A DNA stretch of 64,000 nt from sequence record LR756500.1. One strand, given 5' to 3'. Position 1 is the first letter of the stretch. Every line of letters begins with the position of its first letter. The notes under the pieces are model-generated. The model was given only the letters and a program-made list of their open reading frames with translations, ran no database searches and had not been told where the DNA came from. This document shows, piece by piece, positions 4,299-63,517 of this stretch. The position numbers were made by a program, and so were the translations under genes.

Positions 4299-5471
4299 TT
4301 AACCTTGACACAGGGAAAATTCGCACGAATGACAATATGTACAACCTTCCTTTTTATAAAGACCTGACGGATCTCCGCATAAAGGACATTTAGTCTCAGA
4401 TAACTTTTCTTCTGCATCACCTTTTAAGTATTTAGATAATGTTCTAGAAATTGCTTTACTAAATGCTACTATAGTTCCTTCAGATTTATTTAATTGTTGA
4501 ACAATGAATTTAATATCAGCACCATGTCTTAGACTAACAGATATCATTCTAGTAAGAGCTTCTTCTTCATCTCTTTCGAATAATTCATTAACATTATCTA
4601 GTACTCCATTACCTGATATTTCTAAACTATAATGACCTCTTTTAACTTTTGTTAGAATAGCGTCTTTTATATTTTTAGATATACTTATATTTTTCTCTTT
4701 AAAAGCAAATACTTCATAAGGTTCATTATCCATTAGTCCTACAATTACGACATAATCGTGTCCCTTTGCTGTAATATGATGTATATTACAAGGAAGAGAT
4801 TTAGGTCTAATAGGAGCTTCAGTTTTAATTATTTTTTCTTTTTGTTTTTTATTGCTAACAAGTACTCCTGATCTTGAACCTTCTCTATAAACAGTTAATC
4901 CTTTACATCCTGATTTCCATCCCGTCTCATATACCTTAGATACCATATCTTCAGTTGCATTTTCTGGCAGATTTGTCGTCGAACTTATAGAATGGTCTAT
5001 CCACTGTTGAATTGCACCTTGCATTTTTACTTTTGCAACCCAATCAATATCTGCAGATGATGCTTTATAATAAGGAGATTTTTTAATTACTTCATCTAAT
5101 TGAGTTTCATTATATAATTTTACTTCTTCTATATTATAATTATTAATTTTTAACCATTTTAAAAATTTAGGATGAAATACTAAATATGTTTCCCATGCAT
5201 CACCTGAAAAATCAGTAAATGAAATATTAACTTCTTTATCGTTTGGATTTACTTTTCTATTTCTTTTATATACTGGAAGAAAAACAGGTTCAATTCCAGA
5301 TGTAGTTTGTGTCATAAGGGAAACTGTATTATGAGATACTATTCCATTATCTAAAATATAATAATGAGTATCTTCTACCTCTATATCCATTGTATAATCA
5401 GTATCCGTAGTTTTTTCTAATATTTCTATTAACTCATATTGTATATTTTCTAAATTAACTATTTCTTGCAT
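4299..5471 (-). CDS. nrdJ: Class II (B12-dependent) ribonucleotide reductase, C-terminal fragment, preceded by split-intein C-half
   Basis: After ...GIVSHN come TVSLMTQTTSGIEP, Q.WIDHSISSTTNLP and KGLTVYREGSR, then a TSCPD-like region and a C-terminal CPLCG...CHSC zinc ribbon. Confidence 0.92.
   Translation of the reverse strand: MQEIVNLENIQYELIEILEKTTDTDYTMDIEVEDTHYYILDNGIVSHNTVSLMTQTTSGIEPVFLPVYKRNRKVNPNDKEVNISFTDFSGDAWETYLVFHPKFLKWLKINNYNIEEVKLYNETQLDEVIKKSPYYKASSADIDWVAKVKMQGAIQQWIDHSISSTTNLPENATEDMVSKVYETGWKSGCKGLTVYREGSRSGVLVSNKKQKEKIIKTEAPIRPKSLPCNIHHITAKGHDYVVIVGLMDNEPYEVFAFKEKNISISKNIKDAILTKVKRGHYSLEISGNGVLDNVNELFERDEEEALTRMISVSLRHGADIKFIVQQLNKSEGTIVAFSKAISRTLSKYLKGDAEEKLSETKCPLCGDPSGLYKKEGCTYCHSCEFSLCQG
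5328..5471 (-). mobile_element. Split intein C-half (IntC, 48 aa)
   Basis: MQEIV...YTMDIEVEDTHYYILDNGIVSHN|T contains intein blocks F and G, the terminal His-Asn and a Thr+1 nucleophile, and has its own ATG. Confidence 0.9.
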
Positions 5472-6589
5472 AATAAATCTTTTATTTTATTTTTTATTTG
5501 TTCTGTAACTAAATTTATATTAATTAATTCTTTTTCCCATATTATTATAATATCAGATTTAAATTTATCTTTTATAATATTAATTCGTCTTTTATCTCTA
5601 TTTCGTATTTCATCATATATGTTATCTTTATAACATTCTATTTCTGGATTTTTATGCCAATAATCACCATATATTTCAATAACTAAATTAATATCTTTAA
5701 TATAAATATCAGGTTTAATTATTTTAAATTCTCCATTTCCAATATAAAAAGTATATTCATTTTCACCATAATAAATTTTATTAAATATTTTATTATATTC
5801 ATTATAAATATATTCACCTATTAATATAGAAAGTTTAGAATATGGTAATCTTTTAGCTTTTTTAATTAATAATTCAGAATACCATTTTTCTCCGTGTTTT
5901 TTAATTAAATTATCCTTTGAATTTCCAAATTTTAAACATTCTTTAAGTTTGTTATATTTTTCATTTCCTAATTCAACACCAAATTTATTAATATAATTTT
6001 CTAATGTATTAGATTTTTTAGCATTTATTTCTTGCCATTTTATTTTTCCTAACTCACCATATTTACTTATTAACTTATCTAATGATGAGGTATTTTGACG
6101 TTTTCTTAAACATTCTTTTGCTTTTTCAATAGAATCTGTTCTTTTTATCCAATATTCTAATGTTGTGGATTTTTCTCTTTTATTGTATGATGAATTGGGA
6201 TCATTTTTAATATAATCTTTAACTGCACATCTTTTTCTAAATAAATCATATCTTTCTCTACCTAATATTTCTCCATATCTTTCAATAAATCGTTGTAAGG
6301 ACCCAGCCGTTTTTTTATTTTTATTATTCCATATTATTAATCCTTTTTCATTTCCATATTTATCTAAATAATATTGTTTAGATGAATAATATTTACACTT
6401 TAATTTATATTCTTTATATTTTTTATTTCCTTCTATTTCACCGTATTTTAGTATATACTTTTCTAAACTTACTCCTCTAATAAATTTATGATATAATTTA
6501 TATGCTTCTTCAATAGAAAATTTATTAATTAATTCATTCCATTTACTAGGATATGTTTTAACATCTATTCCTTTTAACATCTGCTCCAT
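5459..6589 (-). CDS. Free-standing homing endonuclease (KYG-repeat N-region plus Vsr/DUF559-like PD-(D/E)xK domain) inserted within the fractured nrdJ
   Basis: Repeated Y..KYGE..G motifs and C-terminal KPDIYIKDINLVIEIYGDYWH. It lies between the two intein halves and overlaps the IntC start by 13 nt. Confidence 0.8.
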   Translation of the reverse strand: MEQMLKGIDVKTYPSKWNELINKFSIEEAYKLYHKFIRGVSLEKYILKYGEIEGNKKYKEYKLKCKYYSSKQYYLDKYGNEKGLIIWNNKNKKTAGSLQRFIERYGEILGRERYDLFRKRCAVKDYIKNDPNSSYNKREKSTTLEYWIKRTDSIEKAKECLRKRQNTSSLDKLISKYGELGKIKWQEINAKKSNTLENYINKFGVELGNEKYNKLKECLKFGNSKDNLIKKHGEKWYSELLIKKAKRLPYSKLSILIGEYIYNEYNKIFNKIYYGENEYTFYIGNGEFKIIKPDIYIKDINLVIEIYGDYWHKNPEIECYKDNIYDEIRNRDKRRINIIKDKFKSDIIIIWEKELININLVTEQIKNKIKDLLCKK

Positions 6590-6621
6590 TATTTAATTTT
6601 ATTTTATATATTAATGGAGCA
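6582..6621 (-). promoter_or_regulatory. RNA hairpin sequestering the endonuclease start codon, with a candidate late promoter in its loop
   Basis: 10-bp perfect stem, plus-strand tgctccatta (6582-6591) / taatggagca (6612-6621). One arm contains the ATG at 6589. AATATATAA reads on the minus strand at 6604-6612. Confidence 0.65.
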
Positions 6622-6625
6622 ACTG

Positions 6626-6973
6626 TTAATTTATTTTTTTAATTATTTTATCACCTACTTTTAATTCTTCAGCATTCTTCCAAATTGCTTCTTTATCATT
6701 AATTAAAACTAAAAATTTATGAACTTTACTTGTAAAAATATTGTAATCTTTATCTAATTTAAATCTATAACCCTCTGTTTTTCCATTCCAATATAATTTT
6801 GTTATTTTATTATAGTTTCCATTTATATCTAAAATATTAATAGGTTTAATTAAATCAAACCATATATTATTTTTAGTCTCAAGTTCTTTAATATTAACAC
6901 CATTTATATTAAATATTTCTTCTAATGAAATATCACCTATATCAGTTTTAATTATAGCATCTTTTTCTAAACA
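6626..6973 (-). mobile_element. Split intein N-half (IntN, 115 aa)
   Basis: Starts at Cys1 (TGT 6973-6971) after APTG, with block A CLEKDAIIKT, block B TSKVHKFLV and W..AEELKVGD, then a stop. It has no endonuclease domain. Confidence 0.9.
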
Positions 6974-8470
6974 TCCCGTGGGGGCGGCTGTTAGTAAACC
7001 TATATTTCTTCTTCCGTGTTTAATTAACAGTTCACTTACTTCAGAATCTGCTTTAATTAATCTTTGAATAAATGAATTTCCAATTTCTTTATCTCCATCA
7101 TATATTTTAAAAGATCCTCTATCTTTTGCTAATAAACATGATGATTTATAAACTTCAATTGCCATTATTTTATGAACTTCTTCAGAAAATTTTATAGCAT
7201 CATCTGTAGCATAAGTTAAACCTAATGCAGCTAACATGTCTCCTTCAGCAGTAATACCGATTCCAACTCTTCTGCCTAATAAAGCTTTTTCTTTAATTTT
7301 TTTCCATAAATTTAACTCTATTAATTTAACTTCATCAGATTCTTTATCATTATTAATTTTTTCTAATATTTTATCAATTTTTTCTATTTCTAAATCAATA
7401 ATATCATCTGATATTTTTACTGCATATTTTATATGTTCTTTAAATAACTCAAAATTAAATTTTGCTTCTTTTGTAAATGGATTATCTATATATGAATATA
7501 AATTTATAGCAAGTAACCGACAGCTGTCATACTTACATAGGGCGATTTCCCCGCACGGATTTGTAGAAACAGATTTAAATCCAACATCTGCATAACAATC
7601 TGGCACTGATTCACGTATTATAGTATCCCAAAATAATATTCCAGGTTCAGCTGATTTCCATGCGTTGTGAATAATTTTTTTCCATAATTTTTTAGCATCT
7701 ATTTCTTTAACTATTTTTGCTTTTTCTTTTTGTACGTTTATGGGATATTGTTGAAAATATGATGTATTATTTAAAACTGCCGTCATAAATTCATCATCTA
7801 ATTTAACTGATATATTAGCACCAGTAACTTTACCTTCTGCTAATTTAGCATCAATAAATTCTTCTGTATCTGGATGTTTTATAGATATGCTAAGCATAAG
7901 GGCCCCCCTTCTGCCGTCTTGAGCTACTTCTCTAGTAGAATTAGAGTATCTTTCCATAAAAGGAACTATACCTGTAGATGTCAGTGCAGAATTTTTAACA
8001 GCAGATCCTTTTGGTCTAATATGACTTAAGTCGTGACCAACACCGCCTCTTCTTTTCATTAATTGTATTTGTTCTTGATCTATTTTTAAAATAGATCCAT
8101 AAGAATCACCTTCATCACCAATGACAAAACAATTAGATAATGAAACAATTTGTAAATTATTTCCAATACCCGACATAGGACCGCCTTGTGGAACAATATA
8201 CTTAAAATCCTTAATTAATTCAAATATTTTATCTTCTGATATTGGATTAACATAATTATTTTCTATTCTTGAAATTTCACCTGCTAATCTGTGATGCATA
8301 TCATCAGGTGTTTTTTCATAAAATTTTCCATCAGAATCTTTAATAGCATATTTATTTAAAAATACTTTTGCTATCATTTCATCTCCTTTAAAATATTTTA
8401 AAGATTCTTCTAAAGCTTCATTATAAGTATACGTATTAATAACTTCTTTATTAATTTTAGTCATTTCCAT
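6626..8470 (-). CDS. nrdJ: Class II ribonucleotide reductase, N-terminal fragment, ending in split-intein N-half
   Basis: LSNCFV, RRGGVGHDLS, QDGRRGALM, TNPCGEI and RRVGIGITAEGDMLAALG, then LLTAAPTG followed directly by intein CLEKDA and a TAA stop. Confidence 0.92.
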   Translation of the reverse strand: MEMTKINKEVINTYTYNEALEESLKYFKGDEMIAKVFLNKYAIKDSDGKFYEKTPDDMHHRLAGEISRIENNYVNPISEDKIFELIKDFKYIVPQGGPMSGIGNNLQIVSLSNCFVIGDEGDSYGSILKIDQEQIQLMKRRGGVGHDLSHIRPKGSAVKNSALTSTGIVPFMERYSNSTREVAQDGRRGALMLSISIKHPDTEEFIDAKLAEGKVTGANISVKLDDEFMTAVLNNTSYFQQYPINVQKEKAKIVKEIDAKKLWKKIIHNAWKSAEPGILFWDTIIRESVPDCYADVGFKSVSTNPCGEIALCKYDSCRLLAINLYSYIDNPFTKEAKFNFELFKEHIKYAVKISDDIIDLEIEKIDKILEKINNDKESDEVKLIELNLWKKIKEKALLGRRVGIGITAEGDMLAALGLTYATDDAIKFSEEVHKIMAIEVYKSSCLLAKDRGSFKIYDGDKEIGNSFIQRLIKADSEVSELLIKHGRRNIGLLTAAPTGCLEKDAIIKTDIGDISLEEIFNINGVNIKELETKNNIWFDLIKPINILDINGNYNKITKLYWNGKTEGYRFKLDKDYNIFTSKVHKFLVLINDKEAIWKNAEELKVGDKIIKKIN

Positions 8471-8484
8471 TATTATTTATTTTT

Positions 8485-10428
8485 TTATTTTTTATATTCA
8501 AATTTATAGTTACCTGTTCCAAAACACCTATAACAACCTCTATCATGCATTATATCTACCTCTGTTAAACNNNNNNNNNNNNNNNNNNNNNTTAATTTAT
8601 CCTTCCTAAACTTAAACCTATTCTCCCTTAAACCATCTACTACCCACCAATAATTCAAACCAGTATGCCCTATATATTTAAAACCTAATTTTATATATAA
8701 GTTATCTTGCTCATCAACCGTCCAATCACAATCGGCATAACTTATTATTCTATTCGGTATATACTCCTTTATAAAATGCTTAAATAAGCGACTAGCTCCA
8801 CCAATAACTGAAGTATCTAATTTATTAGCAAATCTAGTCAACTCATACTCTCCTTCTTTAGCTACTTGATTTAAATTTTTACGTAGTTTACCAAAGGTCA
8901 TTAATGATACTAACNNNNNNNNNNNNNNNNNNNNNNNNNNNNNNNNNNNNNNNNNNNNNNNNNNNNNNNNNNNNNNNNNNNNNNNNNNNNNNNNNNNNNN
9001 NNNNNNNNNNNNNNNNNNNNNNNNNNNNNNNNNNNNNNNNNNNNNNNNNNNNNNNNNNNNNNNNNNNNNNNNNNNNNNNNNNNNNNNNNNNNNNNNNNNN
9101 NNNNNNNNNNNNNNNNNNNNNNNNNNGAGTTTAACTCCTTTTTCTTTAGCTAATGCTGTCTTATTTAAATGATAATCTTTAAGTTTATTGAATTCATTGT
9201 GCCAATAAACTCCATTATGTTCTATTCCAATCTTATTATTTGGTATATAAATATCTATCTCATTACCATTTAAAATAGTTCGATCTTTTTTAGTTTCTAT
9301 ATTTAAATCATTTATAAATAATTTAATCTCTTCTTCATTTTTACTTTCAAAAGAATTTGTAGAATTTAAAGGATTACATATNNNNNNNNNNNNNNNNNNN
9401 NNNNNNNNNNNNNNNNNTAAAAGATGTATATTTATATTTTTATAATCTTTGCATTCACTACAATAAAAATCCAATGTTCCATTTTCATATACCTGTTTAA
9501 TATCTAAATTATTATATCGTTCTTTTATTTTATTTTTATGTTTTTCAAATATAATTTTTTTAAAATATATACTCTTAAAAATAATTTTGTTTTTGTATCG
9601 TTCTAAATTAGTATCCTTAATTTTTTCTTGTATATCTTTACACTGTGCTACATTTTCAACTCCATAACGTTCTAAATTAGTATCCTTAATTTTTTCCTTA
9701 ATATCTTCTCTTTGTAATGTATTTTCAACTCTATAACGTTCTAAATTAGTATCCTTAATTTTTTCTTGTATATCTTTACACTGTGCTACATTTTCAACTC
9801 CATAACGTTCTAAATTAGTTTTTTTAATTTTTTCTTGTACATCTTTTCTTTGTATAGCATGCTCTACTCCATATAGTTCCAAATTATTTTTAATAATCTT
9901 ATCTTTTATATCTTTATATTGTAAACTACATTCAACTCCATATTTTTTANNNNNNNNNNNNNNNNNNNNNNNCTTAACATCTTTTGCTTGAAAACTATGC
10001 TCAACTCCATATCGTTTTAAAAATGTTTTTTTAATTTTTTCTTTTACAATATTACTTGATCCTGAATTTTCACATCCATATCTTTCTAAATTAGTTTTTT
10101 TAATTTTTTCTTGTACATCTTTTCTTTGTAAAACAGATGTAATTCCTTCATTTTTTAAAAGTCTTTCTTTAGTTTTTATATGTGCACATTTTAAACATGA
10201 ATATTTATCTGTTAATTTATTGGTCTGTGAAAAATATTTATTATATACAACTTTTTTTTCAATACCACAATAATCACATTTAACATTAATTTTAATACCA
10301 CAGCCGGAATTTAAATTATTAATATCTAAAATTATTATTGATTTTATTTTAATATCTAAATATAAATTTTTATAAAATCTTATATTATTTGAAGTAATAT
10401 TAATTTCAACATTTTTATCTAAAATCAT
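8485..10428 (-). CDS. Hef-like homing endonuclease with tandem KTNLERYGVEN repeats
   Basis: Zn-ribbon CDYCG...CLKC, about 23-aa repeats, EIDIYIP...GIEHNGVYWH nuclease motif and C-terminal YELTRFANK...VIGGASRLF...IISYAD domain. Interrupted by four N-runs. Confidence 0.7.
   Translation of the reverse strand: MILDKNVEINITSNNIRFYKNLYLDIKIKSIIILDINNLNSGCGIKINVKCDYCGIEKKVVYNKYFSQTNKLTDKYSCLKCAHIKTKERLLKNEGITSVLQRKDVQEKIKKTNLERYGCENSGSSNIVKEKIKKTFLKRYGVEHSFQAKDVKXXXXXXXXKKYGVECSLQYKDIKDKIIKNNLELYGVEHAIQRKDVQEKIKKTNLERYGVENVAQCKDIQEKIKDTNLERYRVENTLQREDIKEKIKDTNLERYGVENVAQCKDIQEKIKDTNLERYKNKIIFKSIYFKKIIFEKHKNKIKERYNNLDIKQVYENGTLDFYCSECKDYKNINIHLLXXXXXXXXXXXXICNPLNSTNSFESKNEEEIKLFINDLNIETKKDRTILNGNEIDIYIPNNKIGIEHNGVYWHNEFNKLKDYHLNKTALAKEKGVKLXXXXXXXXXXXXXXXXXXXXXXXXXXXXXXXXXXXXXXXXXXXXXXXXXXXXXXXXXXXXXXXXXXXXXXXLVSLMTFGKLRKNLNQVAKEGEYELTRFANKLDTSVIGGASRLFKHFIKEYIPNRIISYADCDWTVDEQDNLYIKLGFKYIGHTGLNYWWVVDGLRENRFKFRKDKLXXXXXXXXLTEVDIMHDRGCYRCFGTGNYKFEYKK
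9585..9840. repeat. About 69-bp coding tandem repeat (KIKDTNLERYGVENVAQCKDIQE units)
   Basis: cgttctaaattagtatccttaattttttc recurs about every 69 nt; more diverged copies extend to about 10130. Confidence 0.8.
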
Positions 10429-11843
10429 GCACTTTTTCTTTTTTCTAATATATGTTTAATTTCATCTGCTTCCATTTCATATTTAAACATTTCTTTTTTA
10501 TATTCTTTTCTTTGACTATAAAGTCTATTCAATATACCTTTTAATATTGAATCTTTTGTACTATATACACACCCATTAACTGCTACAATTCTATCATCTT
10601 GTTTATATTCATTTCTTACATCAGGATCAACTTTCATTATAAATGAATCAGGAGATACATTCATCTGTCTCATAATCGAAGGATAAAGTGATGCAAAATC
10701 AAAGCAAGCTACTGCTTTATGACGTCCTGTAATTGGTTTTTTAACATAAGCACCTTCATATTGTTCATCTTTATTTTCTTTTCTAATATTAAAATCTGAG
10801 GCTAATATTTTGTTATCTTTTAAAAATTCTCTTGCTAATAATGATTCAGTAATTGAAACTGGTGAATCAGCTTTATAAATACTAATTTTACATAGATTAG
10901 CTAATGTTAAAACTATTTCCATTGTTTTAAGTTTTTCATGAATTAGCATTACTAATAATGTATCAACTGCAGTATAAAATACATATTTTTCAAAATCTTT
11001 TTCTAATAGATCTTTTAAACTTCCATCGTAACTAATTTTCTTTAAACCTACTACTACCTCTGCTACCGTATTTAATTTAAAATTTTCTTTGACATCTACA
11101 CTTCTATCCCATGCTTTATAAAGATCCATATAGTCCATTATTCCAACATGTAGTGGAATATCATTATTTTGATTATTTAATTTTCCGCTTGGTGATGCTA
11201 TAGAAGGATCAATTCCTAATCGACGAGCTCTATTTATAATATATTTCCAATCATAACCAATTACATTCCAACCACTCATCATTGGTATTTTTTTCTGTAC
11301 TATTTCACTTAAAAAAGTATACAGCATGTCATATTCTGTATCAAACTTTTTATAAATAAAGGTAAATTTTTTACCAGTTTGTTCAAAGTATTTATCTATA
11401 CTAGATTGAACATTAGCAATACTTTTTGCAGGCAAATTCAAATGTGAAAATACGATTACTTGATTTTTAGGAGTTGTAAAAGTAATTGTAGTAATTTTTT
11501 CTTTTGCAGAATCTGCTTCTGGAAATCCATCAACAATTTCAACTTCTATATCAATAAAATAAATATCTGGATAGTGTGTTCCAAAAATTTCATCTTGATC
11601 TTCTTTAGATAATCTTTCAAATAATTCTGTTATTGAATGTTTATTTAAAAATTTTGAAGTATATTTTTTAACAGCACGTCCATCCCAATTTGTAAACTTC
11701 TTATCTTTTGATTTATCACTTTCACGACAAATCATCCAATTAGATATATTTTTTAATGGTATTGTTTTAAATGAAACTTTTCCTTCACTATTATAATAAG
11801 ATATAATTAATGAATTACCTTCATTCTCAATGTCTAATAGCAT
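10425..11843 (-). CDS. Family-B DNA polymerase, N-terminal part only (gp43A-like)
   Basis: Exonuclease motifs DIE, SGWN and Y...D, plus polymerase region DFASLYPSIM and L..LYSQRKEYK. It ends before the KxxxNSxYG and YGDTDS motifs. Confidence 0.88.
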   Translation of the reverse strand: MLLDIENEGNSLIISYYNSEGKVSFKTIPLKNISNWMICRESDKSKDKKFTNWDGRAVKKYTSKFLNKHSITELFERLSKEDQDEIFGTHYPDIYFIDIEVEIVDGFPEADSAKEKITTITFTTPKNQVIVFSHLNLPAKSIANVQSSIDKYFEQTGKKFTFIYKKFDTEYDMLYTFLSEIVQKKIPMMSGWNVIGYDWKYIINRARRLGIDPSIASPSGKLNNQNNDIPLHVGIMDYMDLYKAWDRSVDVKENFKLNTVAEVVVGLKKISYDGSLKDLLEKDFEKYVFYTAVDTLLVMLIHEKLKTMEIVLTLANLCKISIYKADSPVSITESLLAREFLKDNKILASDFNIRKENKDEQYEGAYVKKPITGRHKAVACFDFASLYPSIMRQMNVSPDSFIMKVDPDVRNEYKQDDRIVAVNGCVYSTKDSILKGILNRLYSQRKEYKKEMFKYEMEADEIKHILEKRKSA

Positions 11844-12613: not shown

Positions 12614-12674
12614 AATTATAACATATTAAAATTTAAATTTATATGCATTATTATGCTTTTGTTTCACCTGAGAC

Positions 12675-12710
12675 AATTGTGGCTTCTAAAGTATATTAGA
12701 AGCCACAATT
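12675..12710. terminator. Strong stem-loop just after the 12716..13180 stop
   Basis: 15-bp perfect inverted repeat aattgtggcttctaa / ttagaagccacaatt with a 6-nt loop. Confidence 0.65.
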
Positions 12711-12715
12711 TTAAA

Positions 12716-13180
12716 TTAACCTTCAAGATTTTGTGAAGCATTAATATCTCCAATATAAGCTTCTACATCATCATCTGTCAATTCAGCTTGTTTACCGTTT
12801 TCTAATTGTACTAAATATTTTCCTGTATCTTCACTCCATGAAATAATATCGCCTACTAATCCATCAGCTTTACATTTAACTTTAGATCCAGGTATTAAAT
12901 GACTTTCACCAACCAATTTTTGAGTTTTAGCTCCTAATCTATTATTATCATCATTAACTATAACTTCAATTTCAGTTTCATTAAATTGTTGTTGTCCACT
13001 ATCATCTAAACTAACATTATATTTTTTAATATCTTCACTCCAAGAGTTTAAATATCCTAATTGACCACTAGCTTTTACTTTTATTCTAGTACCTGGTGTT
13101 ATAACATCGGCTTCTTTAACCAAATGCTGATTAGTTTTAACGTCGTTTACAAACTCTTCAAATAATTTTACGTATTCCAT
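12716..13180 (-). CDS. Protein with two tandem SH3/KOW-like beta repeats and capsid-targeting-like tag
   Basis: ITPGTRIKVKASGQLGYLNSWSED..KYNVSLD is repeated as LIPGSKVKCKADGLVGDIISWSED..KYLVQLE. N-terminus is MEYVKLFEEFVND. Confidence 0.65.
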   Translation of the reverse strand: MEYVKLFEEFVNDVKTNQHLVKEADVITPGTRIKVKASGQLGYLNSWSEDIKKYNVSLDDSGQQQFNETEIEVIVNDDNNRLGAKTQKLVGESHLIPGSKVKCKADGLVGDIISWSEDTGKYLVQLENGKQAELTDDDVEAYIGDINASQNLEG

Positions 13181-24433: not shown

Positions 24434-26152
24434 TTATTTATATTCGATATCATCAAATAAAATAGGTATACGTTTCTTGAATTCATCTAAAAGTGGACGC
24501 ATTAATTCTCTCATTTGAGGATGGGCTGCATTTGCAACTCTTAGTTTAAAAATATGTCTCCAATCTCTAATATTAGTTGACATATTTATTTCAGTCTTTA
24601 ATGAATTTGGTAATACTGATCTTGCTTGTTGTGGAGACCATTTGTAATCATTCATTAATTTATTATAATATTGTTCAGATTTTAACATTGATGTTAACCA
24701 TTGTACATTTACCGAAGGATAATCAAAATCTTTTGCTAAAGCATTAACATCAAATTCTGTATAAATATGTTCTTTAATATCTAACCATTCTGGTATAATA
24801 AAAGTAATATTATCATCTTTACTATAATTACAATAACGGGTACTATTATGAACTATAAATCCATTAGCAATATAATTAGAATATGGTTCTTTCATTTCTA
24901 TATCATAAGTATCTTCTACACCAATATATGTAATACTTATAATTTCATCTATTATTCCTTTAACACCTATATGCCAACCGTGATGTAATAAATTATGACA
25001 ACTACAGCATACTTTTGTAAGATTTATATCTTCATTATTGTTTAGATCTTTATCTTTATGATGAACTTCTAATTTAATATTACTTCCACATAATTCACAT
25101 GAAAATATATTTTCTTTCTTAAATCTTGCTTCATCTCTACCTCTCAGTCCGCCACTCCAATTAGAATTATCTTCTCCAAATCCATTGTTATGATGGTTAA
25201 GCCTTAACGAATTTGCTTGCCTTTTAACTGATACATTATTATCCTCGGTTAATCCTTTATTCCAGACAACTCTCCCATCATTGTACTGTTTTTGTATTGT
25301 ATTTTTAATTTTAATATATGAATCAGCAGTATGATTTTTATTGTACTTATCTTTATCTTTATCATTTTTTCGTTTAACAAAAATATTAAGTGTTTGAAGT
25401 TTAGTAAGAATTGTTCTATATGGAATAGAAAATTCTTCACTAATTTCCGTAGGAGATAACCCAACTATATTATATAATCTAATTAATTCATTATCAGATA
25501 ACGTGCATAAATTAGGTCTGCCATTAACTATAACCTTACTACCAATACTTAAATTTCGTAATTCTTCATATTTGTGAGTACTTGTCAAAAATCTATGAGT
25601 ATTAGTACACTTTATTTTATACCCCAATTTAGTAACAACTTCAAATATTACATTATTACCCTTAAAGAATATAGCATTAAAATGATTAGATACTATTTCA
25701 TTATTTTCATTTATACTTCGTAAAGTTAATGTCTTATTATGAGTTCTGTCATAATTTGTACCATGTTCTTGTCTTTCATATAATTCTTTGATAGTAATAT
25801 TTTTATTAGAGGTTGACTTAATAATAGTATCACCTGTTACACATTCTTGGGCAAAACTAGCTATTCTGTGTCTAACTAATTCATGACTAACTCCTCTATC
25901 ACATGTAAATTTAACAGTAATATTACCACCGAATTCTAACATTGCTTCGTGACCCATTTTAATAAGTTTAGCAATAAGTACTCTTGCTGATATAGCATCT
26001 AAATCATATAATTCACCATTAGGTGTTCTATGACCTATTTCTATTTTACCTTCGCTTTTATAACAAGTTCTAGCCGCTATTTCAATTTCTTTTAAAATAC
26101 TTTCTCCATCAATAGGAGTTAATATTTCATATTTTGATTTGATTAAATTCAT
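24434..26152 (-). CDS. thyX: FAD-dependent thymidylate synthase containing an intein
   Basis: GHEAMLEF, RGVSHELVRHRIASFAQE|intein|STRYCNY, ARSVLPNS and WRHIFKLR...AHPQMR. Confidence 0.92.
   Translation of the reverse strand: MNLIKSKYEILTPIDGESILKEIEIAARTCYKSEGKIEIGHRTPNGELYDLDAISARVLIAKLIKMGHEAMLEFGGNITVKFTCDRGVSHELVRHRIASFAQECVTGDTIIKSTSNKNITIKELYERQEHGTNYDRTHNKTLTLRSINENNEIVSNHFNAIFFKGNNVIFEVVTKLGYKIKCTNTHRFLTSTHKYEELRNLSIGSKVIVNGRPNLCTLSDNELIRLYNIVGLSPTEISEEFSIPYRTILTKLQTLNIFVKRKNDKDKDKYNKNHTADSYIKIKNTIQKQYNDGRVVWNKGLTEDNNVSVKRQANSLRLNHHNNGFGEDNSNWSGGLRGRDEARFKKENIFSCELCGSNIKLEVHHKDKDLNNNEDINLTKVCCSCHNLLHHGWHIGVKGIIDEIISITYIGVEDTYDIEMKEPYSNYIANGFIVHNSTRYCNYSKDDNITFIIPEWLDIKEHIYTEFDVNALAKDFDYPSVNVQWLTSMLKSEQYYNKLMNDYKWSPQQARSVLPNSLKTEINMSTNIRDWRHIFKLRVANAAHPQMRELMRPLLDEFKKRIPILFDDIEYK
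24845..25843 (-). mobile_element. Cis-splicing intein (333 aa) with HNH endonuclease
   Basis: Starts CVTGDT, has block B CTNTHRF, HNH CELCG...LEVHHKD...N....CCSCHNLLH, and ends TYDIEM...YIANGFIVHN|S. Confidence 0.9.
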
Positions 26153-61321: not shown

Positions 61322-61852
61322 CTATAAAAATCCAAAATCATCAGCATTATACAAATGCTCGTATTTATTTTTTATTTTACTACTAACACTTAACTTTCTT
61401 ATAAATTCATACTTTAAATATAAATTGGGATCTTCACTCAACCAATTATCAACTATACTATCTATATCATTTCCAATTATATCTAATTGCTCTATCTTTA
61501 AAAATTCTTTTGGTAATTTTTTAAGATTATTATTATTTAAACTTAATATTCTTAATTTTTTTAACTGACTTATCTTTTTAGATATCAACGTTAATTTATT
61601 ATTATTTAAATCTAATACGACTAAATTTTTAAGTTTTAATATGTCATCAGGTACTGATGACAATTGATTATCAAATAAATAAAGTTGTATTAAATTTTTA
61701 AATTTATATACTCTATCTGGAATAGTTGTTATTTGATGTCCGTTTAAATATATTACATCATCATTTATATTTTTTTCAGCTATAATACTCATAGCTATAT
61801 CAGGTCCTTTATTTTCTAATAAAAATTCTTCATATTCTAAAATGTATTTCAT
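61322..61852 (-). CDS. Leucine-rich-repeat protein with capsid-targeting-like tag
   Basis: LYLFDNQLSSVP / LDLNNNKLTLIS / LSLNNNNLKKLP fit LxLxxNxL. N-terminus is MKYILEYEEFLLE. Confidence 0.85.
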   Translation of the reverse strand: MKYILEYEEFLLENKGPDIAMSIIAEKNINDDVIYLNGHQITTIPDRVYKFKNLIQLYLFDNQLSSVPDDILKLKNLVVLDLNNNKLTLISKKISQLKKLRILSLNNNNLKKLPKEFLKIEQLDIIGNDIDSIVDNWLSEDPNLYLKYEFIRKLSVSSKIKNKYEHLYNADDFGFL

Positions 61853-62460
61853 TTTCCACGTCTTATATTAGTTAATATTCTCAAATCATTTGCACTATGT
61901 TGTGTATAATTTAAATTAAATTTCTTAGAAAATATTTTAAAATCAAAAGGATCAGAATCTCCGCCACTATGAATTATTGTATACTTTAAAATTAATTCTG
62001 CCAAGTCTTTAGATGTACTAGCGTCAATTATTTTTCTTTCTAAATATAATCTTATTTGATTATCCATTAATACACTATCTAAAGCTACTAATAATTGTTG
62101 CCTACTTCTTTCAGGCCCTATATCATCAAATCTTTGAAGCAATCTCATACTAGTTACTTTTTCTTTGAAAGGTCTTATTTGTTTTGTATAATATAACAAA
62201 GTAACTTCTAATTTATTTTCATCTTTGTTTCCTTCTTTTTCTTTTGCTTTTCTTAAAACTTCATCAAATTCTTTTTGCGATGCAGTTCCTTTAACAGTAT
62301 TAGGAGTTCTAAATGAGTTACTTGATTTTGATTTATTTTTATCATTAGAAGTGTTTTTAAACTTATTCGCATATTCGGGTGGAATATAACGTCCACTATA
62401 TCTTATTTTTTCATCATCTGCTTCTAATAAAAATTCTTCGTATTCTAAAATGTATTTCAT
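61849..62460 (-). CDS. Hypothetical protein with capsid-targeting-like tag
   Basis: N-terminal 13 aa are identical to those of the LRR protein. Confidence 0.65.
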   Translation of the reverse strand: MKYILEYEEFLLEADDEKIRYSGRYIPPEYANKFKNTSNDKNKSKSSNSFRTPNTVKGTASQKEFDEVLRKAKEKEGNKDENKLEVTLLYYTKQIRPFKEKVTSMRLLQRFDDIGPERSRQQLLVALDSVLMDNQIRLYLERKIIDASTSKDLAELILKYTIIHSGGDSDPFDFKIFSKKFNLNYTQHSANDLRILTNIRRGK

Positions 62461-62468
62461 ATGCTTAC

Positions 62469-62511
62469 TCTATTTTAATTATATATTTTGAATATATAAT
62501 TAAAAATAGAA
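62469..62511. promoter_or_regulatory. Near-palindromic divergent promoter region
   Basis: tctattttaattatatatt-ttg-aatatataattaaaaataga gives AATATATAA on both strands, upstream of the two divergent tagged genes. Confidence 0.55.
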
Positions 62512-62515
62512 GGTT

Positions 62516-63517
62516 ATGAAGTTTATATTAGAGTATGAAGAATTTTTGTTTGAGAATACTAGATATGTAGATGCTGAAAAAGACTTTTTAAAAACTAAAA
62601 GAATAGATAAAAAGACTTGGGATTATTTAATAACAAATATAAGTAATAAATATGTTTATTGGGCTGTAAGAGAGTATGTTTTAAATAAAGAAAATAATAG
62701 AATTGGTAATAAATTAGAAGATTATGTTAATATATCACGAATGTATGATATCAAAGGAAATACATTTGCTAAAAATGAAAGAGATTTATATAATTTTTCA
62801 GATTTTAATAAAAATAACGATTATACATTTAATAAAGTAAAAGATTTATATAATATTAATAACAGTTTAAAAATCAAACCAAAAGATATATTTAAAACTA
62901 GAACAGATTTAGTTGAAATAGGAAGTAATATTTTATATGAAGATAAAGAAGGTAATATTGTAGTTGAAGCATTAAATAGAGCTGCTGATTTATATTGGGG
63001 AAGTTGGTATAAAAAAAGAGAAGGTGCATTAGTTATAGATAACTGTATGACAAGTGAACCTTCATCTGATATAAAATATTTAAAAGATGTTCCAGAGGGT
63101 GGTAGACTTTATATTATATTACCTAAAGAACCGATAATTATATTAAGAAGATTATTTATAATGGAATATGAAGATGCATGGGGATTCGTAGGTCATCAAG
63201 ATTTTTCGATTGAAGAAACTAGTTATAAAAATATGTTAATTAAAAAATATCATGCTTTATATAAAGAATTAAATAAAAAATTAAATTATAAAAATGAAGA
63301 ATTATATAATATAATTAAAAGACTTTTTGAGTTAGATAGTAAACATGTAATCTATGATTACATTTATAATGGTTATAATGAATTAGATATTAATATAGAA
63401 TTTAATGAATTTATTAAACAATTAAACAATAATTTTAATCATATACCATCATATATGTCAGAGTATTTTATAGAATTATATAATTATTATCATGGATTAA
63501 CTAATAAAATAGTTTAA
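62516..63517 (+). CDS. Hypothetical protein with capsid-targeting-like tag; the only convincing plus-strand gene
   Basis: 333-aa ORF starting MKFILEYEEFLFE; no competing minus-strand ORF covers it. Confidence 0.75.
   Translation: MKFILEYEEFLFENTRYVDAEKDFLKTKRIDKKTWDYLITNISNKYVYWAVREYVLNKENNRIGNKLEDYVNISRMYDIKGNTFAKNERDLYNFSDFNKNNDYTFNKVKDLYNINNSLKIKPKDIFKTRTDLVEIGSNILYEDKEGNIVVEALNRAADLYWGSWYKKREGALVIDNCMTSEPSSDIKYLKDVPEGGRLYIILPKEPIIILRRLFIMEYEDAWGFVGHQDFSIEETSYKNMLIKKYHALYKELNKKLNYKNEELYNIIKRLFELDSKHVIYDYIYNGYNELDINIEFNEFIKQLNNNFNHIPSYMSEYFIELYNYYHGLTNKIV

What the first reader, a model, noticed from the sequence alone, without database searches (positions are those of the whole stretch)
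6582..6621. Hairpin-plus-late-promoter switch controlling the intervening endonuclease
Seen: the 36-nt gap after IntN carries a 10-bp arm complementary to the endonuclease start (UGCUCCAUUA / UAAUGGAGCA), with AATATATAA in the loop. Established: T4 I-TevI and Aeh1 mobE are silenced on early read-through transcripts by a hairpin over the initiation region and expressed from a late promoter that omits the 5' arm. The same logic appears here inside a split-intein locus.
Basis: partly seen in the sequence, partly recalled or inferred. Interest (0 to 1): 0.7.

Follow-up and report, generated by a model that had tools for sequence, protein, structure and literature searches.

The report
Start-masking hairpin before a homing endonuclease
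A conserved RNA hairpin hides the start of a selfish endonuclease gene lodged inside a phage's split ribonucleotide reductase gene, and its loop carries the phage's probable late-gene promoter; this control device was already described for such "fractured genes" in 2009, so this is a well-supported new example and not a new mechanism.

Summary
On the minus strand, a 10-bp perfect stem (6621-6612 with 6591-6582) extends to 18-nt arms (6629-6612 with 6591-6574) around a 20-nt loop. Folding energy is -18.2 kcal/mol, z -6.6. The stem covers both candidate ATGs of the endonuclease gene and the stop codon of the IntN gene.

In 25 orthologous metagenomic loci (RNR-IntN, endonuclease, IntC-RNR) the helix is kept by compensatory changes. 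Seventeen of 26 loops carry a TATATAA or TATAAATA-like word.

In this phage's own genome, TATATAA(A/T)..AAA is a strand-specific motif 12-26 nt before start codons. It precedes the major head protein, prohead protease, portal and tail-sheath stabilizer genes. A gp55-like late sigma gene is present. Two more fractured genes here (PIN-PhoH and GyrA-like topoisomerase) carry the same module.

Predicted cost to open the start region falls from about 15-16 to about 3 kcal/mol if the transcript begins in the loop.

No transcript data exist.

It is not new. Dassa et al. 2009 (PMC2677866) reported such hairpins, many with TATAAATA, before the endonucleases of split-intein loci. Verdict: a new member of a known kind.

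The parts
6626..8470 (-). Ribonucleotide reductase N-terminal part fused to the N-terminal half of a split intein (IntN, about residues 506-614); TAA stop at 6628-6626
   Evidence: Pfam Ribonuc_red_lgC E 9e-63, Ribonuc_red_lgN and Intein_splicing at 509-610. The IntN tail ...GDKIIK.. is conserved in 26 loci.
6612..6629 (-). 5' arm of the hairpin (core 6622-6612, outer helix 6629-6624). It contains the IntN stop codon.
   Evidence: covariation
6592..6611 (-). 20-nt loop
6597..6610 (-). Candidate late-promoter word TATATAAAATAAAA within the loop (sense strand, read from 6610 down to 6597). The inferred transcript start, about 6598-6592, would lack the 5' arm.
   Evidence: The 14-mer occurs 11 times in the genome; those matched to a called gene lie just upstream of its start. 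TATATAA is enriched upstream in a strand-specific way. It precedes late genes. The transcript start itself is inferred, not shown.
6574..6591 (-). 3' arm of the hairpin. It holds ATG-1 (6589-6587), GGAG (6587-6584) and ATG-2 (6580-6578).
   Evidence: Both ATGs fit the family's N-terminal alignment.
5459..6589 (-). Free-standing homing-endonuclease-like gene (376 aa from ATG-1) with a Vsr-like C-terminal nuclease region
   Evidence: phrog_22677 E 1e-20. 64 homologs, the remote ones carrying PF18741/PF04480. Weak match to the Vsr endonuclease in PDB, E 0.5.
4299..5471 (-). C-terminal intein half (IntC, ending ..VSHN|T) fused to the RNR C-terminal part. Its start overlaps the endonuclease's 3' end by 13 nt.
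   Evidence: Pfam Intein_splicing 8-48, Ribonuc_red_lgC 49-195 and TSCPD; coordinates

Best explanation
This is the 5' control module of a selfish endonuclease gene that sits between the two halves of a split-intein ribonucleotide reductase gene (a 'fractured gene').

Both RNR halves are presumably needed together, so transcripts made for them probably run through the endonuclease gene. On such read-through transcripts, the sequence just after the IntN stop codon pairs with the first codons of the endonuclease gene. This buries the start codon in an 18-nt-arm hairpin, so that little endonuclease is made.

The hairpin loop carries the phage's own late-gene upstream motif (TATATAAAATAAAA). This is probably a promoter with only a -10 element, read by a gp55-like late sigma factor. 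Transcripts that start a few bases after it begin in the loop, lack the 5' arm, cannot form the hairpin and are translatable. The endonuclease would therefore be made mainly late in infection.

Shown: the hairpin, its conservation by compensatory change, the genome-wide motif with its position and strand bias, its presence before late structural genes, and the gp55-like gene.

Inferred: that the motif is a promoter, where transcription starts, the timing, and the size of the translational effect.
For: Hairpin at the locus: -18.2 kcal/mol, z -6.56.

Homologous loci: 27 non-redundant loci have the same gene order. In 22 the start codon is paired in the predicted fold (mean z -4.9). Covariation is 81.8% paired against 29-59% for slid controls, with 46 double-change cells against 21 +/- 3.7 (0 of 500 shuffles reach this). 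The loop carries TATATAA, or TATAAATA with at most 1 mismatch, in 17 of 26 loci against 6.8 expected.

Own genome: ATATATAA is 48% intergenic, while 13% of the genome is intergenic. TATATAA has 62 sense against 25 antisense hits within 60 nt of starts, at a median of about 18-20 nt before the ATG. It occurs in 50 of 228 upstream regions against 28 +/- 4.9 in shuffles. No -35-like conservation is seen. The motif lies before the major head protein, prohead protease, portal and tail-sheath stabilizer genes. A gp55-family ORF matches phrog_234 at E 1.6e-12.

Accessibility: the start region costs 15-16 kcal/mol to open on read-through RNA and 2.6-3.6 kcal/mol on RNA starting in the loop. The genome median is 4.3, and this gene ranks 8th of 561.

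Independent repeats of the module in the same genome, with unrelated arm sequences: the PIN-PhoH fractured gene (z -10.2) and the GyrA-like topoisomerase fractured gene.

Context: no terminator-like site was found between the upstream genes and the endonuclease, and genes are tightly packed.

Precedent: PMC2677866 and PMC2988022.
Against: - There is no RNA evidence of any kind. No RNA runs hold this sequence.
- The T4 consensus TATAAATA itself is not enriched in this genome (8 against 13.4 expected). The motif could be an RNA-level leader element and not a promoter. With a T4-like start, the leader would be only about 7-17 nt.
- Nine of 26 homologous loops lack the motif, so the promoter is less conserved than the hairpin.
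- The IntN stop codon lies inside the stem in 12 of 26 loci, and within 5 nt of it or inside it in 18 of 26. Terminating ribosomes should therefore melt part of the 5' arm, so silencing on read-through RNA may be leaky.
- The preference for the sense strand over the antisense strand in folding is weak (17 of 27 loci, p 0.049).
Confidence: 0.67

Rival explanations
1. Translational coupling device. The hairpin keeps the endonuclease start closed unless a ribosome finishing the IntN ORF unwinds the 5' arm, which contains or abuts the stop codon. Endonuclease synthesis would then be tied at a low ratio to translation of the upstream RNR-IntN gene, as in MS2 coat/replicase-type unmasking. This could act instead of, or alongside, a late promoter.
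For: The stop codon lies inside the stem here (6628-6626 pairs with 6577-6575). Its end lies within 5 nt of the stem or inside it in 18 of 26 loci, at a median of 0.5 nt. The hairpin is more conserved than the loop motif.
Against: The hairpin fills almost the whole short gap, so closeness to the stop may simply reflect compaction. The loop motif is enriched and matches the genome's late-gene motif, which coupling does not explain. The 10-11 bp core lies mostly beyond the few bases that a terminating ribosome would be expected to open (own estimate, not computed).
Confidence: 0.2
2. RNA processing or stability element. The stem-loop would be an RNase III-type cleavage site or a 3'-end protector that separates or stabilises the RNR-IntN message, with start-codon masking as a by-product.
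For: It is a long, near-perfect stem at a gene boundary. No U-tract follows it, so it is not an intrinsic terminator on the sense strand.
Against: The 3' arm ends at or over the endonuclease start in 22 of 27 loci, even though arm sequences and loop lengths vary. In this genome the most occluded starts include several endonuclease genes. Nothing here tests cleavage.
Confidence: 0.07
3. DNA-level element. The inverted repeat would be an operator for autorepression by the dimeric endonuclease (as the I-TevI operator overlaps its late promoter) or a recombination or cruciform site of the mobile cassette.
For: I-TevI autorepression at an operator overlapping its late promoter is established (PMC2988022). 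Part of the arm sequence is conserved among orthologs (consensus AAC.A..GC.C / G.GC..T.GTT). Folding barely distinguishes the strands.
Against: Arm sequences at the three fractured genes of this one genome are unrelated and track each endonuclease's own first codons. Fifteen G-U pairs are tolerated in the sense-strand helix. No comparison with a homing site was possible.
Confidence: 0.05
4. Chance palindrome in an AT-rich genome, with no function.
For: The genome is 24% G+C and contains 198 perfect inverted repeats of at least 10 bp with short loops.
Against: z -6.56; covariation across 25 loci; recurrence at two other fractured genes in the genome.
Confidence: 0.01

Closest known systems
Hairpins upstream of endonuclease genes in 'fractured genes' (Dassa, London, Stoddard, Schueler-Furman & Pietrokovski 2009, NAR 37:2560; PMC2677866)
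   Same: The arrangement is the same: host gene N-part plus IntN, then a free-standing Vsr-like endonuclease, then IntC plus the host gene C-part. The endonuclease's 3' end overlaps the downstream gene (13 nt here). That paper reports hairpins in 15 of 16 endonuclease 5' UTRs, 10 of them holding TATAAATA, and two conserved motifs that pair in the stem. NrdJ-type RNR is among the host genes.
   Different: This locus is in a groundwater phage of more than 400 kb, not in marine GOS reads. The loop word is TATATAAAATAAAA, not TATAAATA. Here it could be tied to the phage's own late-gene upstream motif and to a gp55-like gene. Three such modules occur in one genome. The intein tail differs from my recollection of NrdJ-1 (memory, not tested).
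Aeh1 mobE in nrdA (Gibb & Edgell 2007 and 2009, as cited in PMC2988022)
   Same: A free-standing endonuclease splits an RNR large-subunit gene. A hairpin sequesters its initiation region on read-through transcripts, and a late promoter lies within or next to the hairpin.
   Different: mobE is an HNH enzyme and the split NrdA assembles without an intein. An SD-type RBS is sequestered there, whereas here SD sites are rare and the start codon itself is masked.
T4 I-TevI / I-TevII / I-TevIII and segB regulation (PMC2988022)
   Same: A late promoter is positioned so that late transcripts lack the sequence needed for the inhibitory structure, and the endonuclease is embedded in an early or middle transcription unit.
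   Different: These are intron-encoded GIY-YIG or HNH enzymes. For I-TevI the rationale includes protecting intron splicing, and it also autorepresses at an operator. Neither point applies or was tested here.
Translational coupling by structure unmasking (for example MS2 coat and replicase; textbook knowledge, not checked here)
   Same: A downstream start is buried in a stem whose other strand is traversed or approached by ribosomes on the upstream ORF.
   Different: Here only the stop codon and a few bases of the arm are within reach of the upstream ribosome. A promoter-like word sits in the loop.

Membership tests
Start/RBS-sequestering hairpin with internal late promoter (T4 I-TevI / Aeh1 mobE type) | A stable local hairpin whose 3' arm contains the initiation region of the endonuclease gene | tested here: met
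   -18.2 kcal/mol, z -6.56, with both ATGs in the 3' arm. Opening cost is 15-16 kcal/mol against a genome median of 4.3.
Start/RBS-sequestering hairpin with internal late promoter (T4 I-TevI / Aeh1 mobE type) | The structure is maintained by selection (compensatory changes in relatives) | tested here: met
   10 of 12 pairs show changes on both sides. 81.8% of cells are paired against 29-59% for slid controls. 0 of 500 shuffles reach the covariation score.
Start/RBS-sequestering hairpin with internal late promoter (T4 I-TevI / Aeh1 mobE type) | A late promoter placed so that its transcripts lack the 5' arm | tested here: inconclusive
   The loop holds the genome's late-gene upstream motif and 17 of 26 relatives have a like word. 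Promoter activity and the transcript start are not shown.
Start/RBS-sequestering hairpin with internal late promoter (T4 I-TevI / Aeh1 mobE type) | The endonuclease gene lies on read-through transcripts of an earlier transcription unit | tested here: inconclusive
   Upstream genes are packed or overlapping (polB part, endonuclease, RNR-N; a 14-nt gap at 8471-8484) and no terminator-like site was found in 5300-8600. No RNA data exist.
Start/RBS-sequestering hairpin with internal late promoter (T4 I-TevI / Aeh1 mobE type) | Translation is repressed early and permitted late | not testable with these tools
   This needs infection time courses or reporters. The phage is uncultured.
Fractured gene (split intein with intervening free-standing endonuclease; Dassa 2009) | The host gene is split at an intein, with IntN and IntC on separate adjacent ORFs | tested here: met
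   Intein_splicing N blocks lie at residues 509-610 of the upstream ORF and C blocks at 8-48 of the downstream ORF, both flanked by Ribonuc_red_lgC.
Fractured gene (split intein with intervening free-standing endonuclease; Dassa 2009) | A free-standing endonuclease ORF lies between the halves, with its 3' end overlapping the downstream gene | tested here: met
   The ORF is 6589..5459 and overlaps 5471..4299 by 13 nt. The same order is seen in homologous contigs.
Vsr-like homing endonuclease family of fractured genes | A C-terminal Vsr-type nuclease fold with conserved acidic and His residues | tested here: inconclusive
   Invariant D294, K298, E305, D309 and H312 in 32 homologs. The profile match to Vsr in PDB is only E 0.5. 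Remote homologs carry PF18741/PF04480. No fold was predicted and no cleavage can be tested.
T4-type (gp55-dependent) late promoter | Consensus TATAAATA at -10 | tested here: not met
   The loop has TATATAAAATA. TATAAATA is not enriched upstream of genes in this genome (8 against 13.4 expected). The related word TATATAA is enriched.
T4-type (gp55-dependent) late promoter | No -35 element, a gp55-family sigma encoded, and the motif found before late structural genes | tested here: met
   No conservation upstream of the motif. phrog_234 hit at E 1.6e-12 in a 124-aa ORF. The motif lies before the head, protease, portal and sheath-stabilizer genes.

The most novel reading that the evidence does not exclude
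The hairpin may be more than a timer. It could be a portable three-in-one module that travels with, or is rebuilt for, each gene-fracturing endonuclease.

Its 5' arm supplies the stop codon that truncates the intein. Its loop supplies a late promoter. Its 3' arm is the endonuclease's own first codons. Ribosomes terminating on IntN would then set a low, coupled level of early endonuclease synthesis, with a late burst from the loop promoter.

The three differently sequenced copies in one SD-poor huge phage would show that the design is re-evolved locally and not inherited as a sequence.
Probability: 0.25. Interest if true: 0.45.

Novelty: new member of a known kind. Interest (0 to 1): 0.28.

Why it matters
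The finding shows that the T4/Aeh1 way of taming a selfish endonuclease extends to a very distant, huge, SD-poor groundwater phage. The start is locked on early read-through RNA and freed on late transcripts.

The device is kept by compensatory evolution across many uncultured phages. It also gives a working definition of this phage's probable late promoter (RA-TATATAA-www-AAA), which is useful for annotating its genome.

It does not open a new question. The principle and its occurrence in split-intein loci were published in 2009.

Tried and rejected
- A single-protein scan of viral contigs with the endonuclease found nothing. A profile scan was needed.
- Direct search of the genome with T4 gp55 found nothing. 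Pfam has no usable gp55 model. The PHROG profile did find a match.
- Rfam gave no match at E up to 1 in 5300-8600.
- Intrinsic terminator reading: no terminator-like site on either strand, and the sense-strand stem is followed by A-rich coding sequence.
- Sigma-70 reading (TTAACA, 17 nt, TAAAAT at 6629-6601): such hits are as frequent in shuffles (30 against 30.1), so it was rejected as evidence.
- Shine-Dalgarno reading of GGAG (6587-6584): only 3 nt separate it from ATG-2, and only 7 of 561 genes have GGAG or GAGG upstream. It is probably not used as an RBS here, although relatives have AGGAG about 8 nt before their ATG.
- Dispersed-repeat reading: the arm words are not repeated as a unit.
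- RNA evidence: only DNA runs from groundwater and soil hold the stretch.
- The PDB profile search gave only a weak Vsr match.
- Strand test by folding energy is only marginal.

I did not seek them. I have set that instance aside and it is not used as evidence.

Full report
**Setting.** The window is part of a 429-kb metagenomic phage contig. It is identical to GenBank LR756500.1, 'uncultured phage'. The only sequencing runs that hold it are groundwater metagenomes. The genome is 24% G+C, and standard-code ORFs cover 87% of it.

Around the finding all genes run on the minus strand:
- 8470..6626 encodes the N-terminal part of a ribonucleotide reductase, ending in the N-terminal half of an intein.
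- 6589..5459 encodes a 376-aa endonuclease-like protein.
- 5471..4299 encodes the C-terminal intein half followed by the rest of the reductase (Pfam).

The middle protein belongs to phrog_22677. It has 64 metagenomic homologs, and the remote ones carry the Vsr-related domains PF18741 and PF04480. A profile of the family aligns only weakly (E 0.5) with the Vsr endonuclease in PDB.

**The observation.** The structure is larger than reported:
- 10 Watson-Crick pairs (6621-6612 with 6591-6582);
- a U-G pair;
- a 1x1 mismatch;
- six more pairs (6629-6624 with 6579-6574);
- a 20-nt loop (6611-6592).

The fold is -18.2 kcal/mol, z -6.56, and 0 of 200 shuffles fold as well. It persists in a 161-nt context. 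The 3' arm contains both in-frame ATGs (6589 and 6580). The 5' arm contains the TAA stop of the IntN gene.

Perfect inverted repeats of this size with at least 4 G/C are rare: 28 in 429 kb. The arm words are not a dispersed repeat.

**Comparative evidence for the hairpin.** Homologs of the endonuclease sit in the same order (RNR-IntN, endonuclease, IntC-RNR) on many phage-like contigs. I placed the start codon by the family profile and removed duplicates, which left 27 loci.
- In 22 loci the start codon is paired in the predicted fold of -70..+15. Mean energy is -18.2 kcal/mol and mean z is -4.9.
- Arm sequences differ between loci.
- On a plain MAFFT alignment of 25 loci, RNAalifold finds 8 pairs, all with compensatory changes.
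- A 12-pair helix that I specified is 81.8% paired, against 29-59% when the 3' partners are slid by 1-3 columns. It has 46 double-change cells against 21 +/- 3.7 in shuffles. Its covariation score is 0.394 against 0.202, and 0 of 500 shuffles reach it.

The sense strand folds only slightly better than the antisense strand (17 of 27 loci, p 0.049). The argument for an RNA structure on the sense strand therefore rests mainly on its fixed relation to the start codon.

**The loop word in relatives.** Seventeen of 26 loops contain TATATAA, or TATAAATA with at most one mismatch. About 6.8 are expected from shuffled loops.

**The loop word in the phage's own genome.**
- ATATATAA is 48% intergenic, although only 13% of the genome is intergenic.
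- TATATAA lies within 60 nt upstream of a same-strand start 62 times. Its reverse complement does so 25 times. The median distance is about 18-20 nt before the ATG.
- It occurs in 50 of 228 upstream regions, against 28 +/- 4.9 in dinucleotide shuffles. The reverse complement is not enriched, and neither is the T4 word TATAAATA.
- The aligned instances extend the motif to R-A-TATATAA-w-w-w-A-A-A, with no conserved -35-like part.
- The exact 14-mer of this loop occurs 11 times in the genome. Those I could match to a called gene lie directly before its start.

Genes preceded by the motif include the major head protein, the prohead protease, the portal protein and a tail-sheath stabilizer. They also include several homing endonucleases and a transposase. 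A baseplate-wedge instance is set aside because it falls on a masked stretch (see the disclosure below).

A 124-aa ORF matches the T4 gp55 late-sigma family (phrog_234, E 1.6e-12). A single-sequence search with T4 gp55 had found nothing.

Together this makes the loop word a credible gp55-type late promoter of this phage. It is a variant of the T4 consensus, not the consensus itself.

**Predicted consequence.** The cost of opening -12..+12 around either ATG is 15-16 kcal/mol on RNA that starts upstream. It is 2.6-3.6 kcal/mol on RNA that starts anywhere in the loop. Across all 561 called genes the median is 4.3 kcal/mol, and this gene ranks 8th.

**The same module elsewhere in this genome.**
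- The second most occluded start belongs to a paralogous endonuclease. It lies between a PIN-domain ORF and an IntC-PhoH ORF, so it marks a second fractured gene. It has a 27-bp stem, z -10.2, and the TATATAAAATAAAA word straddles the 5' arm and the loop.
- A third fractured gene, a GyrA-like topoisomerase subunit split by an intein, has an intervening ORF with a weaker hairpin (-9.5 kcal/mol, z -2.1). It has the same loop word and its ATG in the 3' arm.
- A further endonuclease-like gene shows the same module.
- Endonuclease genes that overlap their upstream neighbour have neither hairpin nor motif, for example 10428..8485. T4 likewise has promoter-less endonuclease cassettes (PMC2988022).

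The arms at the three fractured genes are unrelated in sequence. Each follows its own endonuclease's first codons. This argues for selection on pairing and against a DNA-sequence site.

**Mechanism and its limits.** The hairpin is a lock on the start codon on read-through transcripts, and a late promoter in the loop bypasses it. I put this at about 0.67. Several points limit it:
- Nothing here shows a transcript start or timing, because no RNA runs exist.
- Nine of 26 relatives lack the loop word. The lock is therefore the conserved core and the promoter is a frequent addition.
- This phage almost never uses Shine-Dalgarno sites (25 of 561 genes). The GGAG in the arm, 3 nt before ATG-2, is probably a relic or simply part of the stem. 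Relatives do have AGGAG about 8 nt before their ATG.
- The IntN stop codon lies inside the stem in 12 of 26 loci, and within 5 nt of it or inside it in 18 of 26. A terminating ribosome should therefore open at least the outer helix. Coupled, low-level translation is a real alternative or complement.

Terminator, sigma-70 promoter, Rfam family and dispersed-repeat readings were checked and dropped.

**What is known.** Dassa et al. 2009 (PMC2677866) described 'fractured genes' as split inteins with an intervening free-standing, often Vsr-like endonuclease. They reported RNA hairpins in 15 of 16 endonuclease 5' UTRs, ten of them containing the late-promoter word TATAAATA. They also reported two conserved motifs that pair in the stem, and overlap of the endonuclease's 3' end with the downstream gene. 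They explicitly compared these features with Aeh1 mobE. The T4/Aeh1 paradigm is reviewed in PMC2988022.

The present locus meets every sequence-level feature of that description. It is therefore a new member of a known kind. This analysis adds four things:
- quantified covariation;
- the link between the loop word and the phage's own late-gene motif and gp55-like gene;
- the recurrence at three fractured genes in one huge phage;
- the observation that the stop codon is built into the stem.

Noticed in passing
window 8485-11843 and 1-123; G000:C1:52093-54680: The family-B DNA polymerase seems to be in at least three pieces. Part 1 is 11843..10425; its end overlaps by 4 nt a 647-aa homing endonuclease (10428..8485, phrog_3339). 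A second piece with an IntN lies about 10 kb away at G000:53910-54680. An IntC match lies at G000:52093-52323. The endonucleases at these junctions have no hairpin or TATATAA word.
   Followed up: partly
G000:C1:301594-304856 (L166), outside the window: A second fractured gene: a PIN-domain ORF, then a Vsr-like endonuclease paralog (430 aa), then IntC-PhoH. Its start sits in a 27-bp hairpin (-26.8 kcal/mol, z -10.2) whose 5' arm and loop together carry TATATAAAATAAAA.
   Followed up: yes
G000:C1:425877-428599 (L178, L180), outside the window: A third fractured gene: a GyrA/ParC-like topoisomerase subunit split by an intein, with a 300-aa intervening ORF (weak DUF7487 match). It has a weaker start-masking hairpin with the same loop word.
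   Followed up: yes
window 24434-26152: The thymidylate synthase ORF contains an HNH-endonuclease-like insert and a full Intein_splicing match (G000:79402-80367). This looks like a contiguous intein, not a split one.
   Followed up: no
G000:C1:35794-36168 (L169:1417-1791): The gp55-like late sigma ORF has only 124 aa and matches profile positions 3-107 of 181. It lies directly upstream of a homing endonuclease gene (G000:34048-35661). It may itself be truncated or split.
   Followed up: no
G000:C1:371401-372390 (L167:1401-2390): An AAA-ATPase / clamp-loader-like gene has the most occluded start in the genome. A roughly 23-bp G+C-rich stem over its ATG gives -37.4 kcal/mol and an opening cost of 32.8 kcal/mol. 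The reason is unknown.
   Followed up: no
whole genome: Shine-Dalgarno-like words are rare before genes: 25 of 561 genes, and GGAG or GAGG in only 7. This suggests a host with SD-independent initiation. RNR DNA similarity is highest to Bacteroides and crAss-like phages.
   Followed up: partly
genome, window-relative 193502-219220 (plus-strand genes, outside the window): A different, longer upstream word (..TTTGTTATTATATT directly before TATATAA) recurs before a block of small plus-strand genes. It may be another promoter class.
   Followed up: no
window 62440-62540: Divergent genes 61849-62460 (-) and 62516-63517 (+) share a palindromic spacer with a TATATAA word facing each way. This produces strong but probably incidental hairpins over both starts.
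   Followed up: no
window 12674-12709: A perfect 15-bp stem with a 6-nt loop follows the gene ending at 12716 and precedes the dUTPase / polB / RNR gene run. It may be a terminator or processing site, although no T-run follows it.
   Followed up: no
G000:C1:37994-39229 (L165:13994-15229): A transposase-like gene (phrog_506) also carries the TATATAA word 14 nt before its ATG. Several kinds of mobile gene in this phage therefore seem to use the late-gene motif.
   Followed up: no
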